Below are positions 40,662 to 64,000 of a stretch of 64,000 nucleotides of DNA, in pieces (positions within the stretch are counted from its first letter, which is position 1; every line of letters begins with the position of its first letter). Position numbers and translations under genes: made by a program. Origin of the DNA: Penicillus capitatus (lineage: Eukaryota; Plantae; Chlorophyta); NCBI GenBank assembly GCA_965649825.1, contig OZ287706.1, positions 744,001-808,000 of the forward strand, read 5' to 3'. The notes under the pieces are model-generated. The model searched no databases and was not told the origin of the DNA. It saw only the letters and a list, made by a program, of their open reading frames with translations.

Positions 40662-41829
40662 ACCTCCAGCGATTGCAGAACATGAAGATTGTGCCCTAAG
40701 GCAACAGAATCCAAATCTTCCACGCAATATTTGCCACCAATGTTCAATTCATCTTTTTTTCTTGCTCAGCGGTAGGTCCCTGGCCCGTGGGTCGATAAAC
40801 CGCCGCGATGAATCGATCTTAATATTCATGGCAATAGACACCCAGAATCTATGTAACTGACAACCCGATATTTGCCCGATTTCGCGTCTCATACGTTTTT
40901 TCCTGCCATGCAGGTCACCCCTCGGTCGACGTGTGGGGTTTTCACTGCGGACGACAACAAATCGAGATTCGTCGATCGAGCCGTTTTCTTCACACGTGTG
41001 TAACAGCGCGTCGTCAGATGGCAACGATGAGAACCGTTTGCATCTGTCGCATCCTTGCATTCAGAAAAGGAGCGTGTGATATCCGAACAGACGCCGAATG
41101 CACGGTCTTCATCAATCCCCCTTCACCACGATTACATCCGAATAACTCCACAGAAAAGACGGTACAGCTCCTATCTGCCGTGCTTGCGATCTAGACAGTC
41201 ATCAAAAGTAACATCTGTGTCGTTCGTGACGCATGGACGAAGGAAGGGCTTTCCTTATCTGCCCTCCATCTCCGATATCAGCTGTCGTGAGACCGAATGT
41301 GCCCTGCGGTCTCTTTTTCAGATTAAGCTGAATACTGACGTCCCGTCGACGGGCCACATGGTCGCAGAAGGAGGAGGCGCCATTCAACCTGTCGCCATCG
41401 AAGACCACAGATCGTCCTGTCTATTCCCTTTCGAGGAACTTGCACTCCCTTCCCGAACGCCACAACGGCTGCACGACTTCTGCCAAGTGATGTTGGTAAA
41501 CGACCGCCTCAGAATTGCGTCAGCGGCTTCCCTGATACCTCTGCACTGCTGCAGTACAGAAAGATCATGCGGAAGGAAGAGATCGGGAGACTTAAGGACA
41601 TTAAGTCAGGTAACGTGAACATGCCTTGTTGAGTCGTCACCGGCACGCATCACAAACCGCTGTCGAGTCGAGCACGGACGGTTCACGCACCGCATTATCT
41701 CGCATTCAATAGAAAGCGAACGCGTTTCAACCAGTGCGCAGATCTTCGTCGGAGTTGTCCCTTTAATGAACTGCTTGGGGACTGGCAGGCACAACGAGCA
41801 CACTTTCTCACTCGCCGTTTTGTCGCGCT

Positions 41830-43185
41830 ATGTACCGAGTGGGAGACGTCATAGAGGGCGGATATTTCGTCCGAGAAGTCTTCCGAATTCGAGCAAACGG
41901 CGCCATTTGCCGAGTACGCCTGCTAAAGACATCAAAAAGCCCTCCCTGTTAGCTACAGGAGTTGTCTCCAGTGCACAAGATATGGAGATGGCAGCGATGT
42001 GACAATTGAATGTATATTCCTCAGAGCAATGGATCTTCCTGAAACTGCAGACTACTACGAGCAACGCAAAATGGCAGGCAACGGCTCATCCCTCCCTTTG
42101 CTCATGCATGCACACTGCAGGATATTCTCACGGGCAGTTCGCAGAATCGAGAACAGCGACCGGAATGGTTTGAGATCGAAGTCGACGGGAATAGAATCCT
42201 ACACATCATTCAAGTGTGACCGATGCGCTCATTCCTTTCTTCAGTGAACGGCGGCAGTCTACAGGACTGTTATCCGCAGATCGTTTGCCGGATTCTGCAC
42301 CTTACACCTCCTGAGAGGATCTGGTGCGTCCGTCACATCATGCGCGCATCGATCGACTGACCACGCTGTGCTCTCACGCAGCACGGACGTCGAAGTAAGG
42401 CCCGGGCCAGAGGATGCCCGACCGACCGTAAGGAGAGGTCAACGCTGTCTGGAGATCGACGTCCCTCCACCGTTTCGATATCGAAGTGCGTGCATCGCGT
42501 CTCGTCATTCCTGTAGATTGGCCTGTTCATGGTGGGTGTGTTGCTCGCCAGCCTTGCCCTTTCTCGTCATGCTCGTTCTTTGCATTTCCATCTTTCTGCT
42601 GGCGACAGGCCTCCTCGCTTTCTCTTCATACACTGCAATGCATAAAGTCATGGATGGAAGTACGGGATTCCCTGGCCGTCCGTGCAATGCGATGCGTTTC
42701 GTGTTTGGCAGGACACTACGTACTTAACTCTCTTCTTATTCTCATGTGGCTGTTTGTACTGCCTCTGCCTGCTCTGTTCGTCGCGATGCTGTCCGGCCGG
42801 CAGTTGTTGATCATCGCACCATGCACGTTCGAAGTCAGAAGGACGATCGGACGACCTCTGCGCTCATCCGCCGATGCACCTCCCACCTGCCATCTCTGGA
42901 AGCCATCCCGCATCGACAGAATGCTGCGCCGACAAGTCACAGGCAAAACGCGAGATCTGACGAAGGCAGAAGTAAGAACAATGCCGCTTCCCACGATCGA
43001 GACAGACATGTCCTGTGGTGCAGGTGAAGGCATCGACCTGTTGTGCCTCCACGGTTTCAATGTTAGTCTTAGCTGAAGTCCGCAGAGAATATCAACTGTT
43101 TCCACTTCTTTCGCTATCCGAGCAAGTGTGGCTCGCGAGGGAGATTTGTTCTTTCCTCGAGAGCATACCAAGAGGAGAACCGTGA
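41830..43185 (+). CDS. Degenerate kinase-N-lobe + TM + C-terminal PH-like domain protein, paralog A
   Basis: Exon-by-exon alignment to paralog B (YRVGDV..., same 34-aa exon 2, RPEWFE, CLEIDVPP, GRQLLI...FEVRRTIG, GKTRDL, EQVWLAREI). One exon junction near 42200-42260 is uncertain. Confidence 0.65.
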
Positions 43186-43699
43186 TTTCTCGAATCAAAT
43201 GCCCACATATGTCATGCTGTGTATGATAGATAGTCTTCTTTCATATGACGCTCAAGTGCAATGTGCTGTCGGAAAAAGGACGAGTGCTCCCTGCCAATGG
43301 CAGATCCACATCCATCAGCCGCGCGGATCGTCTCGATCGACAGATCGGGAAACGCATTCAAAAGCCAGAATGGTTGATTACAATGAATGGGAAGAATCTC
43401 GAATAACAACACGGGAATTCAAGATAGATCTTCTAGAGAGTGTCGCGTTATTGTGCACGTACACACTAAGTCTTCTTCAAAGCCTCTGTGCCGCGAACAG
43501 TGACGAAGCCCATGAAACGGACGGCATTTCTATCTGTACAGCTCTCGCGGATACTATCCCCCATCCCCCACTGGTCGCTTCGACAAAACAACTTGAACTG
43601 ATGCGTCATCTTCGTTAGTGACGGAAAGAGAATTGAGGCATCCATGTCGCACAGTGCGTTTGGTGTTGCGCCTGGTGCTTACTCTAAATTGGATTCGCC

Positions 43700-45155
43700 T
43701 CACAGATTCACTGGAGCATTCAGATTGATGCACTCCAGGATTAGGTTGACCTCATCGGCAATCCATTCTTGTTCTTCTATGGAAAGGAAAGGAAACACGC
43801 GCTGTCGCGTGATGCTTCCGCTCAAAACAATCGTGCTTATATTCATGCAGCGGTCCTGTCCTTGTTCCACCTGCGCCGCCCGTCGTGACCTATCTGTGGG
43901 ATAACGAGATTTATGCATCACCTCCGCCTTCTTTAGATCTTTCGTCTTGCTTGTTACTTGTGCCCTGAACCATCTATCGAAACAGGAAGTGTGCCATCCG
44001 TCGATGCGGTCGCAGAAACGGGATTTATGCCAAAAAGGCAGTCCCAGTGTCCTTCTCACTTCGAAGTCGCTGTAGCTGATCCTCAGATGCTGGCGACCGA
44101 AGAACATCGCACAGAAGACAAACGGCGAGAGAGTGACGACTGCCCAGAAGGGCGCCAAGAAGACAACGTGCCAACGCCCTCCTAAAAGAAGAGACATTCG
44201 ACGGCAGACAGGCGAGACGCAGAGGTGTCGACCGCGATCGGCGATGTGGTCGACGAGGAGACATGTTATGAACGAAAGGACACCGACAAACGCCAAGAAG
44301 ACGAGCGTCAAGAGACAGAGCGCAAGCAACCATGGACGACCTGACGGACACAGGTCAGACAAACCGACACCGAAACGCGTGATAGGACGGACTTAAGCGC
44401 GTCCACAGTGGCGGAACGTCGACTTCCAGAAAGCACTCGCCGTATCTTCGCACCGAAGACCATGCGTTCTGCGGTCCATGTCGTACTTCCTCGGCGATTC
44501 CGCACCTGCGAGAGCATGTAGAGGGAGGGGCATGTGGAGGCGTCGGGTGCACCTGGAAGGATGAACGATGGCGTGGCAGCAGGTGGAGCGCAGTTCAGAA
44601 ACGGAACGTCCCTGTTACGTACACCGTTTCTGTTTTTGTGGCCTCAGGGGTGAAGTGCAGTTACTGCGACGACTAGAAAGCGCTTGTTGTTTCCTTCCTG
44701 TGTCTCCAGCCATGGAGGCCTCTGCAGCCGACGATCGCTGTGCTCGGTCAACAGCTCCTTCAGAAACAGAATCCAGAGAATGAATGGCCTCGGCGAAGGC
44801 TGTACGTGCTTCGCCTTCTCGTAGACGCCCGGTGAGAACGGAGGCTGCGTCGAGCACAGAGACAGGCAGTCAAAGATCACTTCACATCCGTCGCGCAGAT
44901 TTGCACACTGCAACATAGCATGCGTGATAGTGTCGTCCCAGAAGATCGGTACGAAGACGCACGCGGCATACGGTCGTGCCTCGTGGAGTCAGTTGGACTT
45001 CCTCGATGAGGTACCGCTCAAAAACAACGTCGCCAACGCGGTACGCCGACGAGCAATTGTCTGCAACAGAGATGCGTCCGAGTATTGTAAGAGGTCACAC
45101 GGCAAGAGCCAGTTCGGCGCGGCCGTGGAGGAGGGACCTTACCAGCAGAGACCAT
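43700..45155 (-). CDS. Degenerate kinase-N-lobe + TM + C-terminal PH-like domain protein, paralog B
   Basis: YRVGDVVFERYLI, CLSL, FLVVA|GRSVSEL, FLEVDVPP, TM segments, APFW, FFGRQHLRI, SKTKDL, EQEWIADEV. All introns are GT-AG. Confidence 0.7.
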
Positions 45156-45971
45156 CCGGTTAGAAAAGGTCGTTTCACGAGTTCTTGGATTTCGTCGTCT
45201 ACAATGATCTACACGGTTTAAGTTAAGCGCCCAGGATTTCAGGTGTCTTTTCTGACACGCGGAAGGCCGCACCGCGACTCGCAATTATGCACAGTGTTCT
45301 CAGCTATTTGTGGCCGTTCGCTAAACGAGGCATGATATTACATCCAGGCATTCAGCTATCGATGGAACCCCGCAGAAATTGTCTTGTTGTGCCCACGCAA
45401 TTGTGGTCAGATACATGGCATGTATTCAAACGGCAAGGCCGCGCCTTTGCGCTTTGTCTCATCAGCGCACCATTATGATACCACAAACGTCAGAGCACAT
45501 GCCAAGCGGCTGTATCACTCGAACGACGGACGTTCCATGATGTCGTTCGCTGCTTAGAGCCAAAGGCTCGAGGCAAGTGGAGATTCACAAGACACCTCGA
45601 GACGGACAAGGCAATCCGAAATCAACTTCGAATGGAAAAAAAGCATTTGCAGGTTCTGCGTCATCGCGGATCGACGCTGCCGTAAGACAGATGCCGCGAC
45701 GAGTATTTAGAACGCGACGCCGAGTGCCGTCACCTCGGCCATCGTCTGTCGCGATGCGTCCAGACCGAACGATGCCATGCAAACCTGCAAGAAAAGTCAC
45801 GGGCGCACCTCTGTCTCTGCCATTCGGCTGCGCGAGCGCATCTCTCTAGGTAAGGTATCCTCCCATGGACGGATTGGGGATGGATCGTGTCCCATGGTGG
45901 GTCCGAGGGAGATGACTCATGTTGAATCATCGACGGCTCCTCTGCAAGTAGCTCCCTCTGTACCTCTTCGA

Positions 45972-47264
45972 ATGTTGTATGCGCGTTTGAGTCGTTCCGC
46001 TTTCATCGGTTCGCCTCTACCAACTCGACATCTCTTAACACGTCGAGTCGCCAGTCGTTGCGTCGCAGCAGTGGCGGAAATGGTCTCCACAGACGATCTC
46101 AAACAGTGCCACAAGGAGCTGATACCGCTCATACAGTCGAAGAACTGCAATCCGATTCTCGTGCGACTGGCCTGGCACGACTCCGGAACATACAACAAGG
46201 TACAGACGCCATATCATGAAGTGCAAGCGACGATGGCGTCGCAGGACATGGCGGACAGGTGGCCCGTTTGCGGCGGCGCGAATGGGAGCATTCGTTTCAA
46301 ACCCGAGATCGATCACGGTGCCAACGCCGGTGCGCTGTCCATCTCGTCGCCACCGTTGTCGAGCGATGTTGTTGGCATGAAGGTTTGGCGAATGCCTTGG
46401 CGTTGGTAGAGCCCATCAAACAGAAGTACCCAAATGTGTCTTACGCGGACATCTACCAGATGGCCTCCGCTGTGGCCATCGAGGTGAACGCTTTCCATCA
46501 GCACGAGATCTCTTCACCGTGTAACAGGTCGCTGGAGGACCGAAGATTCCGATGCGCTACGGTCGCACAGACGCCACGGGACCAGACGACTGCCCAGTCG
46601 AAGGAAACCTCCCAGGTGTGATAGGGAGACGTTAGCCTACATGTGGGATCGTTGTTCTGCAGCGGGTGGCGCGCCGTATCCTAAAGAGGCGAAGGGCCCG
46701 GCGGCGCATCTGCGCGATATCTTCTATCGCATGGGACTGACGGACCAGGACATCGTGGCTCTGTCAGGGGCACACACCATCGGACGCGCCTATCCAACAC
46801 GATCTGGATTCGGTACGGTGGGATCGTCGGCGGAGGACGGCGTTATCGGATGCGACTGGCAGGGAAAGAAAGGACGAAGTACACGGAGAAAGGCCCGGGT
46901 ACGGTCGGCGGCAGCTCGTGGACACCGGAGTGGCTCAAGTTCGACAACTCTTACTTTGTGGTGGGACACATCCGCCAGCTGTCTTTTCGCAGCTGTGCCC
47001 TCTCGCTGTAGGAAGTGAAGGAGAAACGCGATGCCGATTTGCTGGTGCTCGAGACTGATGCATGCCTCTTCGAAGACGACGCATTCAAGTCCGCACATCA
47101 CGGATTATGCATGACCCGAGTGCGATCTTTCTGTGCACAGGCCCTATGCTGAGAAGTACGCCGCCGATCAGGCTGCGTTCTTCGCGGACTACGCCGCCTC
47201 GCATGCGAAGCTCTCGGAGCTCGGCGTCAAGTGGGTCGAAGGCGGTCCTGTGACACTGGAGTGA
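45972..47264 (+). CDS. APX: Plastid ascorbate peroxidase
   Basis: [56 protein letters not shown]; transit peptide. Confidence 0.96.
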
Positions 47265-52404: not shown

Positions 52405-52815
52405 ATGGTGCGCACAAAGCAGACGGCTCGCAAGTCGACTGGCGGCAAGGCGCCGCGCAAGCAGCTGGCGATGAAGGCCGCTCGCAAGTCTGCCCCCGTG
52501 AAAGGTGGCGTCAAGAAGCCGCACCGCTTCCGCCCAGGAACGGTGGCGCTGAGAGAGATTCGCCGATACCAGAAGTCCACAGAACTGCTCATCCGGAGAG
52601 CGCCGTTCCAGAGGATTGTCCGTGAGATCGCGCAAGACTTCAAGTCCGACCTTCGTTATCAAGCCAGTGCCGTTATGGCTTTGCAAGAAGCGGCAGAAGC
52701 TTTCCTCGTCGGCCTGTTCGAGGATTCGAATTTGTGTGCCATCCATGCGAAACGCGTCACCGTGATGCCAAAGGACCTGAAACTCGCAAGACGCATCCGC
52801 GGAGATGCGAGCTAA
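52405..52815 (+). CDS. H3: Divergent histone H3 variant (intronless)
   Basis: 136-aa H3 with about 18 substitutions relative to the canonical plant H3.1 sequence. Confidence 0.97.
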
Positions 52816-63403: not shown

Positions 63404-64000
63404 TCAGGGATCGAGACGATGAGATTTTGTCCCTTCGACGACCTCTCTGATCTCCGGAACGAGCCACTCCAGTTCCTCTTCGGAGAAAACGGAGGAAAGC
63501 TGGTGTTCGATGTCATTTTCGCGCAACACGAGGATCCTGTGTACATTTCCCTGCAAGTCTGTGTGCGGCAGAATCTTAAAACACACGCCCACGGTCAACA
63601 TGTGCAACAGGAATGAGGCAAACTTACTCCGACGCCGACGAGATCCGCCGTTTTCCCCTTCGTTTGTTTGACAAACAGTTTGTCCAGACGCGTCGCGGTG
63701 GACATTGCTTTGCTGGCACCATCTCCTTTTCTGCTCCTCGTCCTCGTCGTCCGCGTAATGCTGTATTCGTCGGGAGTGATGGAGAGGTTCTCGTGGAGGA
63801 ATGCAGTGCGCACGGTGGTCTTCACCAACAAGAAGCCAACAAACCAGGGAAGCGTCGAGAACAGCAGCATCAAAAAAGAAACTGCAAAACAGGACGTTCT
63901 TGCACATGAAACAGGACGCAGATTGAGAGATTACTTGCGCTTGGCGTCAAGATGGCAGCGACAAGCGCTCCGCTGCACCACAAGATCAAGAAACTGAACC
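63404..64000 (-). CDS. 3' part of a third paralog of the TM + PH-like family (5' end outside window)
   Basis: FSTLPWFVGF..AFLHENLSITPDEYSITR, GKTADL followed by an intron at the same position as in paralogs A/B, EEELEWLVPEI. Confidence 0.7.

What the first reader, a model, noticed from the sequence alone, without database searches (positions are those of the whole stretch)
41830..45155. Tail-to-tail paralog pair of half-kinase membrane proteins
Seen: two convergent genes align exon by exon (YRVGDVIEGGYFV/YRVGDVVFERYLI; identical 34-aa exon 2; QRPEWFE/QRPPWLE; CLEIDVPP/FLEVDVPP; TM hairpin; GRQ.L.I...FEVRRT.G; KT.DL; EQ.W.A.E). Recalled: this matches cyanobacterial-type Ser/Thr kinases (G...RY.I, KxLSL, FylVqe..G.sL) that carry a C-terminal LEI.IPP-TM-FW-...LEWLA.E domain. 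Here the glycine loop is eroded, the VAIK Lys is D/E, and only ~35 aa separate subdomain V from the C-terminal domain, so the whole HRD/DFG C-lobe is missing in both copies, yet the frames and introns are kept. Inference: a new architecture (orphan kinase N-lobe + membrane/PH-like module) acting as scaffold or decoy, perhaps heteromeric.
Basis: partly seen in the sequence, partly recalled or inferred. Interest (0 to 1): 0.75.

Follow-up and report, generated by a model that had tools for sequence, protein, structure and literature searches.

The report
Membrane proteins with half a kinase
Two neighbouring genes of an unnamed microbial eukaryote encode membrane proteins that keep only the dead front half of a protein kinase, joined to a membrane-inserted PH-like domain; they are conserved and under selection, so they are working non-enzymatic descendants of a cyanobacterial-type kinase.

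Summary
Gene A (+, 41830-43185, 7 exons, 304 aa) and gene B (-, 45155-43700, 8 exons, 334 aa) are convergent paralogs, 39% identical, with the same intron positions. A third paralog, C, starts at the window's end.

Full-length Ser/Thr kinases carrying the same C-terminal module exist in cyanobacteria, green algae and the sister genome of this organism. Exons 1-3 of A and B align with the N-lobe of that family (hhalign probability 97%, E 9e-11). Exon 2 is 34 aa and exon 3 is 31 aa in the kinase as well. The whole C-lobe is missing, and the glycine loop, the beta3 lysine and the alphaC glutamate are lost.

The C-terminal module is homologous to the canonical one (E 2.5e-16). That module models confidently (pLDDT 90) as a PH-like domain split by a two-helix membrane hairpin. 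Its best structural match is EROS/CYBC1.

Orthologs at 78% and 96% nucleotide identity keep both reading frames open, and frame-breaking changes fall only in introns. dN/dS is 0.17-0.45, so these are not pseudogenes.

Function is inferred only: a non-catalytic membrane adaptor or regulator. Transcription and the organism's identity remain unknown.

The parts
41830..42215 (+). Gene A, exons 1-3 (41830-41913, 41972-42073, 42121-42215): remnant of a kinase N-lobe (beta1-beta5 plus alphaC). The glycine loop reads RIRANG, the beta3 lysine is E, the alphaC glutamate is R.
   Evidence: hhalign against the full-length family: probability 97%, E 9.1e-11. blastp against K of L003: E 1e-6. Exon 2 is 34 aa and exon 3 is 31 aa, as in K. 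dN/dS 0.12-0.19.
42382..42485 (+). Gene A, exon 4: linker plus the two beta strands that precede the membrane hairpin (..PTVRRGQRCLEIDVPP..).
   Evidence: Aligns with KPAGSR..L.IDIPP of the canonical module. These residues form strands 8-11 and 16-20 of the model.
42552..42971 (+). Gene A, exons 5-6 (42552-42659, 42712-42971): membrane helix 1, loop, membrane helix 2, then the beta strands of the PH-like domain (GRQLLIIAPCTFEVRRTIG ... KTRDLTKAE).
   Evidence: Hydropathy. hhalign A7 vs A6, E 2.5e-16. The sister ortholog carries a frameshift that falls in the 42486-42551 intron.
43024..43185 (+). Gene A, exon 7: last strands and the C-terminal helix of the PH-like domain (..LSLSEQVWLAREICSFLE..), including the stop codon.
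44665..45155 (-). Gene B, exons 1-4 (45155-45143, 45060-44963, 44907-44806, 44757-44665): a 13-nt first exon, then the N-lobe remnant. The beta3 lysine is D.
   Evidence: dN/dS 0.25-0.38.
43700..44552 (-). Gene B, exons 5-8 (44552-44393, 44340-44233, 44181-43922, 43870-43700): pre-hairpin strands (..FLEVDVPP..), membrane hairpin, PH-like strands and the C-terminal helix, including the stop codon.
   Evidence: The sister ortholog has in-frame stop codons only inside the 44232-44182 intron.
63404..64000 (-). Gene C, a third paralog cut by the window's end. Approximate exons are 64000-63935 (membrane helix 1), 63881-63628 (helix 2 plus ..HENLSITPDEYSITRT..KGKTADL) and 63550-63404 (..FSEEELEWLVPEIREVVEG, stop). 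Its sister-genome ortholog (L006) is also a half-kinase.
43350..43397 (+). Short stretch between the two genes, KRIQKPEWLITMNGKN, that resembles the exon-3 motif. It may be a relic or a chance match.
   Evidence: tblastx E 0.008. Not followed up.

Best explanation
A and B, together with C and at least two further paralogs elsewhere in this lineage, descend from a membrane-anchored cyanobacterial-type Ser/Thr kinase, here called K.

Shown:
- K is a complete Hanks-type kinase followed by a PH-like domain split by a two-helix membrane hairpin. Because the hairpin returns to the same side, kinase and PH-like domain sit on one face of the membrane.
- The half-kinases form one group separated from all full-length kinases, consistent with a single loss. 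The region from the hinge to the end of the C-lobe was lost in their ancestor, which then multiplied.
- What remains is a catalytically dead N-lobe (five strands plus alphaC, with no glycine loop, no beta3 lysine and no alphaC glutamate) tethered to the split PH-like membrane module.
- The proteins cannot bind ATP in the canonical way or phosphorylate anything.
- All parts, including the N-lobe remnant, are under purifying selection.

Inferred:
- They work as non-catalytic membrane adaptors or regulators.
- The PH-like/hairpin module holds them in the membrane and binds a membrane-protein partner, much as EROS clamps NOX2.
- The N-lobe remnant, whose alphaC/beta4 region is its best-conserved part, serves as a docking surface, plausibly for the N-lobe of full-length K or of another paralog.
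- The membrane motifs that never vary in full-length kinases (WNxF..W, FSxPFW) are lost in A and only partly kept in B. This suggests that the in-membrane partner has changed.
For: Paralogy and gene models.

Full-length relatives with the same module:
- L003 K, Pkinase E 8.7e-40.
- Its syntenic ortholog L008, in the same assembly as the orthologs of A and B, with VAVK, HRD, DFG and APE intact.
- Green-algal and cyanobacterial members.

Homology:
- N-lobe: (probability 97%, E 9.1e-11).
- Module: (E 2.5e-16).
- Shared exon sizes and intron positions with K.

Architecture shared by other paralogs, with exon 3 followed directly by the pre-hairpin exon: C ortholog, D, L011. The half-kinases fall on one side of a branch with 97/96 support.

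Fold of the module: AF2 pLDDT 89.9, pTM 0.80. Foldseek's top hit is EROS, 8kei_D, E 2.2e-5, TM 0.54/0.55 over the full length, followed by PH-like domains. EROS is described as a PH domain separated by two helices (PMC11161758).

Selection:
- Open frames in a 78%-identical genome and a 96%-identical genome.
- All frame-breaking differences lie in introns; the sister assembly keeps a GT-AG at all 13 introns.
- dN/dS: A 0.17-0.22, B 0.29-0.45 against the sister genome; 0.22 and 0.23 against the close relative.
Against: - There is no expression data of any kind. Splicing is inferred from frames, splice signals and ortholog comparison.
- Neither Pfam nor PDB sequence searches detect a kinase in A or B directly. 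The N-lobe assignment rests on one family-level profile comparison plus gene structure.
- Whether an N-lobe folds without its C-lobe is unknown.
- The only model made from window sequence, B's membrane and C-terminal part, was poor (pLDDT 63).
- The fold evidence therefore comes from a cyanobacterial member, not from A or B.
- Exon and intron nucleotide identity to the sister genome are close (about 0.83 against about 0.79), so constraint is moderate.
- B's membrane hairpin is nearly unconstrained (dN/dS 0.56-0.90).
- No partner, location or phenotype is known, even for the full-length family.
Confidence: 0.55

Rival explanations
1. Decoy or dominant-negative. The half-kinases occupy the same membrane site or client as full-length K through the shared PH-like/hairpin module. 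Having no catalytic half, they damp K signalling.
For: They carry the same module as K. K is present in the same genome. Several paralogs exist, which would allow graded titration.
Against: The membrane-helix motifs that never vary in full-length kinases (WNxF..W, FSxPFW) are lost in A and only partly kept in B, so the same in-membrane contacts are unlikely. Long branches separate the half-kinases from K. A pure decoy would not need the N-lobe remnant, yet that part is the most constrained in A.
Confidence: 0.2
2. Stand-alone assembly factor or chaperone of a membrane complex, working like EROS or Ycf4. The former N-lobe is only a structural cap packed on the PH-like domain, and there is no link to kinase signalling any more.
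For: The best structural match of the module is the chaperone EROS. EROS has been called a homolog of the photosystem I assembly factor Ycf4 (PMC5379978). The lineage carries plastid-type genes nearby: a peroxidase, an FrhB-like gene and ClpP.
Against: There is only fold-level similarity (TM about 0.54, 10% identity). No Pfam Ycf4 or DUF4564 match appears in any of 22 members. In all full-length relatives the module is fused to an active kinase, which points to signalling rather than chaperoning.
Confidence: 0.2
3. Decaying gene copies: pseudogenes left from duplications of K that happen still to be open.
For: Catalytic residues and a whole lobe are lost. Exon identity to the sister genome is only slightly above intron identity.
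Against: In three genomes both frames are open. The sister assembly keeps a GT-AG at all 13 introns. Indels in exons are absent (A) or in multiples of three (B), while frameshifts and stop codons fall only in introns. dN/dS is 0.17-0.45 at dS 0.3-0.6. The architecture has persisted through at least four duplications.
Confidence: 0.03
4. Gene-model artefact: the C-lobe exists but was missed, either in an intron, through alternative splicing, or because of misassembly.
For: Models were built without RNA data.
Against: The gaps between exon 3 and the next exon are 166 nt (A) and 112 nt (B), against about 190 aa missing. tblastn with full-length K finds no C-lobe anywhere in the window. The same compact structure is seen in three independent assemblies and in paralogs C, D and L011.
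Confidence: 0.02

Closest known systems
Cyanobacterial and green-algal membrane Ser/Thr kinases with this C-terminal module. These are unnamed entries: 'serine/threonine protein kinase' of Phormidium sp. CCY1219 (P0055), an Elainellaceae MAG (P0054), Edaphochlamys debaryana HYH03_007852, Pleodorina starrii PLESTB_001559000, and Nannochloris, Micractinium, Parachlorella and Picochlorum proteins.
   Same: Homologous N-lobe and homologous C-terminal module, in the same order. The lineage's own full-length member shares exon sizes and intron positions with A and B.
   Different: A and B lack everything from the hinge to the end of the kinase domain (about 190 aa). They have lost the glycine loop, the beta3 lysine, the alphaC glutamate and most of the invariant membrane-helix motifs. 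They lie on long branches.
EROS / CYBC1 (PDB 8kei chain D), chaperone of NADPH oxidase 2.
   Same: The canonical module shares its topology: beta strands, two membrane helices inserted in a PH-like domain, more strands, then a C-terminal helix. Foldseek gives E 2.2e-5 and TM 0.54/0.55 over the whole length.
   Different: Sequence identity is 10% and there is no profile match to DUF4564 or Ycf4. EROS has no kinase part. The comparison used a cyanobacterial member, not A or B.
Classical pseudokinases (for example HER3, STRAD, KSR, IRAK3 and the bacterial pseudokinase families).
   Same: They derive from active kinases, have lost catalytic residues, are kept by selection, and are expected to act by binding rather than catalysis.
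   Different: Classical pseudokinases keep the complete two-lobed fold. A and B keep only the N-lobe.
KIND domain (kinase non-catalytic C-lobe domain; from my own knowledge, not tested here).
   Same: It sets a precedent for a single kinase lobe surviving as a protein-interaction module.
   Different: KIND is the C-lobe; here the N-lobe is kept. The lineage and context are unrelated.

Membership tests
Active Hanks-type protein kinase (Pfam PF00069) | Significant match to the Pkinase profile | tested here: not met
   No Pkinase hit for spliced A, B or their N-terminal parts, even at E <= 10. No kinase appears among PDB hits at E <= 10.
Active Hanks-type protein kinase (Pfam PF00069) | Glycine-rich loop GxGxxG, beta3 lysine (VAIK) and alphaC glutamate | tested here: not met
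   In the alignment to the family, the loop reads RIRANG (A) and LTPRGT (B), the lysine is E (A) and D (B), and the glutamate is R (A) and A (B).
Active Hanks-type protein kinase (Pfam PF00069) | C-lobe with HRD, DFG and APE motifs | tested here: not met
   Absent. Exon 3 is followed after 166 nt (A) or 112 nt (B) by the pre-hairpin exon, and tblastn with K finds no C-lobe in the window.
Membrane Ser/Thr kinases with C-terminal split PH-like module (cyanobacteria, green algae, K of this lineage) | Homologous C-terminal module (..L.IDIPP - hairpin - strands - EQEWL helix) | tested here: met
   hhalign probability 98.7%, E 2.5e-16 over 174 columns. blastp E 6e-11 (A) and 5e-9 (B).
Membrane Ser/Thr kinases with C-terminal split PH-like module (cyanobacteria, green algae, K of this lineage) | N-terminal region homologous to the family's kinase domain | tested here: met
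   Met for the N-lobe only: hhalign probability 97%, E 9.1e-11 over 90 columns. Exon lengths of 34 and 31 aa and intron positions are the same.
Membrane Ser/Thr kinases with C-terminal split PH-like module (cyanobacteria, green algae, K of this lineage) | Complete kinase domain | tested here: not met
   35 of the 36 database hits carry PF00069; A and B do not. The one exception, P0044, starts inside the kinase domain and is nearly identical to the matching part of P0046.
Pseudokinases in the usual sense | Complete two-lobed kinase fold with degraded catalytic motifs | tested here: not met
   Only the N-lobe-equivalent sequence is present.
EROS/CYBC1 - Ycf4 family (DUF4564, Ycf4) | PH-like domain split by a two-helix membrane hairpin | tested here: met
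   Shown for the canonical module of P0055. It is transferred to A and B by homology, not modelled on them directly.
EROS/CYBC1 - Ycf4 family (DUF4564, Ycf4) | Sequence-profile membership | tested here: not met
   No Ycf4 or DUF4564 hit in any of 22 members at E <= 10.
Bacterial PH domains (bPH families) / DUF2244 | Profile match | tested here: inconclusive
   No bPH hit. DUF2244 matches one member only, at E 0.05-0.085, below its cut-off.

The most novel reading that the evidence does not exclude
A selected, multi-copy family of N-lobe-only kinase relics would be the N-lobe counterpart of the C-lobe-only KIND domain. These relics would act as membrane-tethered allosteric partners of the full-length kinase K through N-lobe-to-N-lobe (alphaC) contacts. 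The family's C-terminal module would be an EROS/Ycf4-like clamp on a membrane complex. Together this would describe a previously unrecognised kinase-plus-chaperone-like system, inherited from cyanobacteria, that couples phosphorylation to a membrane client.
Probability: 0.2. Interest if true: 0.8.

Novelty: new variant of a known kind. Interest (0 to 1): 0.6.

Why it matters
- Pseudokinases are defined as complete but dead kinase folds. A family that keeps only the N-lobe, under selection and through several duplications, would show that this lobe alone can serve as a functional module.
- The C-terminal domain of a widespread but unstudied cyanobacterial and green-algal kinase family is not in Pfam. 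It appears here to be a membrane-split PH-like domain of the EROS type, which gives the whole family a testable structural hypothesis.
- The full-length relatives occur in organisms that can be cultured. The idea can therefore be tested even though the owner of this window is known only from metagenome assemblies.

Tried and rejected
- Pfam on spliced A, B and their halves found nothing real; the GSPE_N1E and BST2 hits are sub-threshold chance matches.
- A PDB sequence search with the A/B profile and with the module profile found no relatives.
- A word-indexed protein search with spliced A gave no hits.
- A histone H3 look-up intended to name the organism was not on record.
- AF2 on B's membrane and C-terminal piece with 5 sequences was too weak to use (pLDDT 63).
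- My first gene models had no intron after ..DVPP.. in A and none in B's hairpin loop. They were rejected because the sister ortholog has a 4-nt deletion and stop codons exactly there.
- P0044, a green-algal hit without a kinase domain, was considered as another half-kinase and rejected. It starts at MAPEQFRG and is nearly identical (a handful of substitutions and one indel) to the matching part of P0046, so it is a truncated gene model.
- Whether Synechocystis SpkF, reported as an integral plasma-membrane kinase (PMC11863333), belongs to this family could not be tested, because no sequence was in hand. It is not claimed.
Full report
**Setting**

The window looks eukaryotic. GC content is 0.47-0.60 and genes are split by introns of about 50-60 nt. 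Neighbouring genes include a histone H3, a tubulin-tyrosine ligase, a kinesin, a RuvB-like ATPase, MsrB, a peroxidase, an FrhB-like gene and ClpP. I could not name the organism. Its closest relatives in the collections are long contigs of ENA metagenome assemblies.

**Observation**

Translated comparison of the two strands gives seven colinear blocks at 33-62% identity between a + strand gene (A) and a - strand gene (B). There is almost no nucleotide similarity between them. The spliced proteins are 39% identical over 304 residues, z = 23.

'Identical 34-aa exon 2' means equal length only; 10 of 34 residues match. A third paralog, C, lies on the - strand at 63404-64000 and runs off the window.

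**Gene models and selection**

A homolog search with a profile of window-exact pieces of the C-terminal part found 21 short ORF fragments.

- One fragment led to two near-identical Mb-size contigs of assembly ERZ26696514 (L001, L002). They align with window 41172-46495 end to end at 78% nucleotide identity, with the same neighbouring peroxidase gene.
- Projecting my first models onto that sister genome exposed a 4-nt deletion in A and two in-frame stop codons in B.
- Both fall where the other paralog has an intron. Canonical phase-1 GT-AG introns fit there.
- With those introns, A has 7 exons (304 aa) and B has 8 (334 aa). Every intron position is shared by the two genes.
- Both sister orthologs are open. 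A has no indel in its exons and B has two 3-nt indels.
- The sister assembly keeps a GT-AG at all 13 introns. Intron 2 of A is GC-AG in the window but GT-AG in the sister.

dN/dS against the sister genome is 0.17-0.22 for A and 0.29-0.45 for B, at dS 0.3-0.6. The N-terminal exons give 0.12-0.19 (A) and 0.25-0.38 (B). The membrane hairpin is the least constrained part. A closer relative, L009 at 96.1% identity, also keeps both frames open, with dN/dS 0.22 and 0.23. These are maintained genes. Transcription itself is not shown.

**The kinase link**

Direct searches see no kinase. Pfam gives nothing at E <= 10 and PDB sequences give nothing. The link comes through relatives.

- The most distant fragment, P0021, sits on a 28-kb contig (L003) where upstream exons encode a complete kinase.
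- My spliced model of it, K, hits Pkinase at E 8.7e-40. It continues into ..NIEIDIP.., a hairpin carrying WNAFVLFW and FSIPFWYAG..HQNLRITPRKFYMTKE....KTSDLSRAQ.. and ..LTRIEQNWLVDEIN...
- A aligns with K in two pieces: residues 100-299 with the module (E 6e-11), and residues 4-93 with K's N-lobe, ungapped (E 1e-6).
- K's exon 2 is 34 aa and its exon 3 is 31 aa, as in A and B. The intron after ..YK|CTR.. and the last intron lie at the same places.
- The sister assembly holds the syntenic ortholog of K (L008), with VAVK, HRD, DFG and APE intact. The same genome therefore has one full-length kinase and several half-kinases.
- A profile of six half-kinase N-termini against six full-length kinases gives hhalign probability 97%, E 9.1e-11, over 90 columns from beta1 to the LVQ hinge.

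In that alignment the glycine loop is gone. The beta3 lysine is E (A), D (B and D) or H (C), and the alphaC glutamate is replaced.

**How far the family reaches**

Searches restricted to the module found 640-740-aa kinases of green algae: Edaphochlamys, Pleodorina, Nannochloris, Micractinium, Parachlorella and Picochlorum. They also found 453-477-aa kinases of cyanobacteria: Phormidium sp. CCY1219 and an Elainellaceae MAG. All carry PF00069, apart from one truncated gene model.

**Other half-kinases**

- The sister ortholog of C (L006) has N-lobe exons. Its exon 2 is again 34 aa and its beta3 lysine is H. The ..LEIDIPP.. exon follows directly.
- A fourth paralog, D, lies on another contig (L007) and mirrors B exon for exon.
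- A fragment from another metagenome (L011) shows the same junction.
- In a tree of the module, all half-kinases fall on one side of a branch with 97/96 support. A and B group together, with D next.

One loss of the C-lobe followed by duplications is therefore the simplest history.

**The C-terminal module**

No Pfam family covers it. The half-kinase modules align with the canonical one at hhalign probability 98.7%, E 2.5e-16.

An AlphaFold2 model of the canonical module (P0055 residues 282-450, 22-sequence alignment) is confident: pLDDT 89.9, pTM 0.80. It shows two strands, two long helices, six strands and a C-terminal helix.

Foldseek against the PDB puts EROS/CYBC1 from the NOX2-p22phox-EROS complex first (8kei_D, E 2.2e-5, TM 0.54/0.55 over the full length). 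PH-like domains follow: Lam6, GRK2, Sin1, Sac2, PTB and SSRP1. The structure paper describes EROS as a PH domain separated by two helices (PMC11161758). EROS has been called a homolog of the photosystem I assembly factor Ycf4 (PMC5379978).

Membership in the EROS/Ycf4 sequence family is not.

**Mechanism**

Shown: the proteins have a dead N-lobe and no C-lobe, carry a membrane hairpin that places both soluble parts on the same side, and are under selection.

Inferred: they act by binding.

- The alphaC/beta4 stretch (YE.RK..LL, RP.WFE.E) is the best-conserved part of the remnant. In kinases generally this is a docking and dimerisation surface, which makes contact with K's N-lobe or with a paralog plausible.
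- The invariant membrane motifs of full-length kinases are lost in A and only partly kept in B. This argues against a simple decoy for the same in-membrane partner.

I put about 0.9 on the structural and evolutionary identity and about 0.3 on the adaptor/regulator mechanism. Pseudogene and artefact readings are contradicted by the data above.

**Novelty**

This is a kinase-derived, non-catalytic protein, so the kind is known. The variant is unusual in being N-lobe only, fused to a membrane-split PH-like domain, multi-copy and selected.

Noticed in passing
window 63404-64000 (-): A third family member, C, is cut by the window's end. Its sister-genome ortholog (L006) is also a half-kinase, and it retains more of the canonical membrane motifs than A or B (SWFSFLILW, LFST..WFVG).
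   Followed up: partly
window 43350-43397 (+), between the stop codons of A and B: KRIQKPEWLITMNGKN resembles the exon-3 motif RRLQRPPWLETQEGNN of B (tblastx E 0.008). It may be a relic of a further copy, or a chance match.
   Followed up: no
window 42074-42120: Intron 2 of gene A has a GC donor (GCAGGC...CAG). The sister species has GTGAGC at the same place.
   Followed up: partly
window 1-64000: GC content steps up from about 0.50 (1-44 kb) to 0.55-0.60 (44-62 kb), then drops to 0.47 in the last 2 kb.
   Followed up: no
window 52405-52812 (+): An intron-less histone H3 gene has unusual residues (MVRTKQ..., ...[15 protein letters not shown]...). The exact protein is not on record in the gene collection.
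   Followed up: partly
L006 vs L001 (contig ctg303784 of ERZ26696514): In the sister genome the ortholog of C lies about 100 kb from the A/B pair, against about 18 kb in the window. There has been a rearrangement or a large insertion between the species.
   Followed up: no
L009 1-1370: The first 1.4 kb of the 96%-identical relative does not align with the window upstream of gene A. This is a structural difference between close relatives.
   Followed up: no
L003 and L008: The full-length kinase K sits in conserved synteny (Zip transporter, PIN domain, K, BTB, RRM) in two quite different genomes. One is AT-richer with introns of 39-46 nt; the other is GC-richer.
   Followed up: partly
window 45777-46409 (+): A peroxidase-like gene ([12 protein letters not shown]...) lies head to head with gene B. 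The adjacency is conserved in the sister genome and in L009.
   Followed up: no
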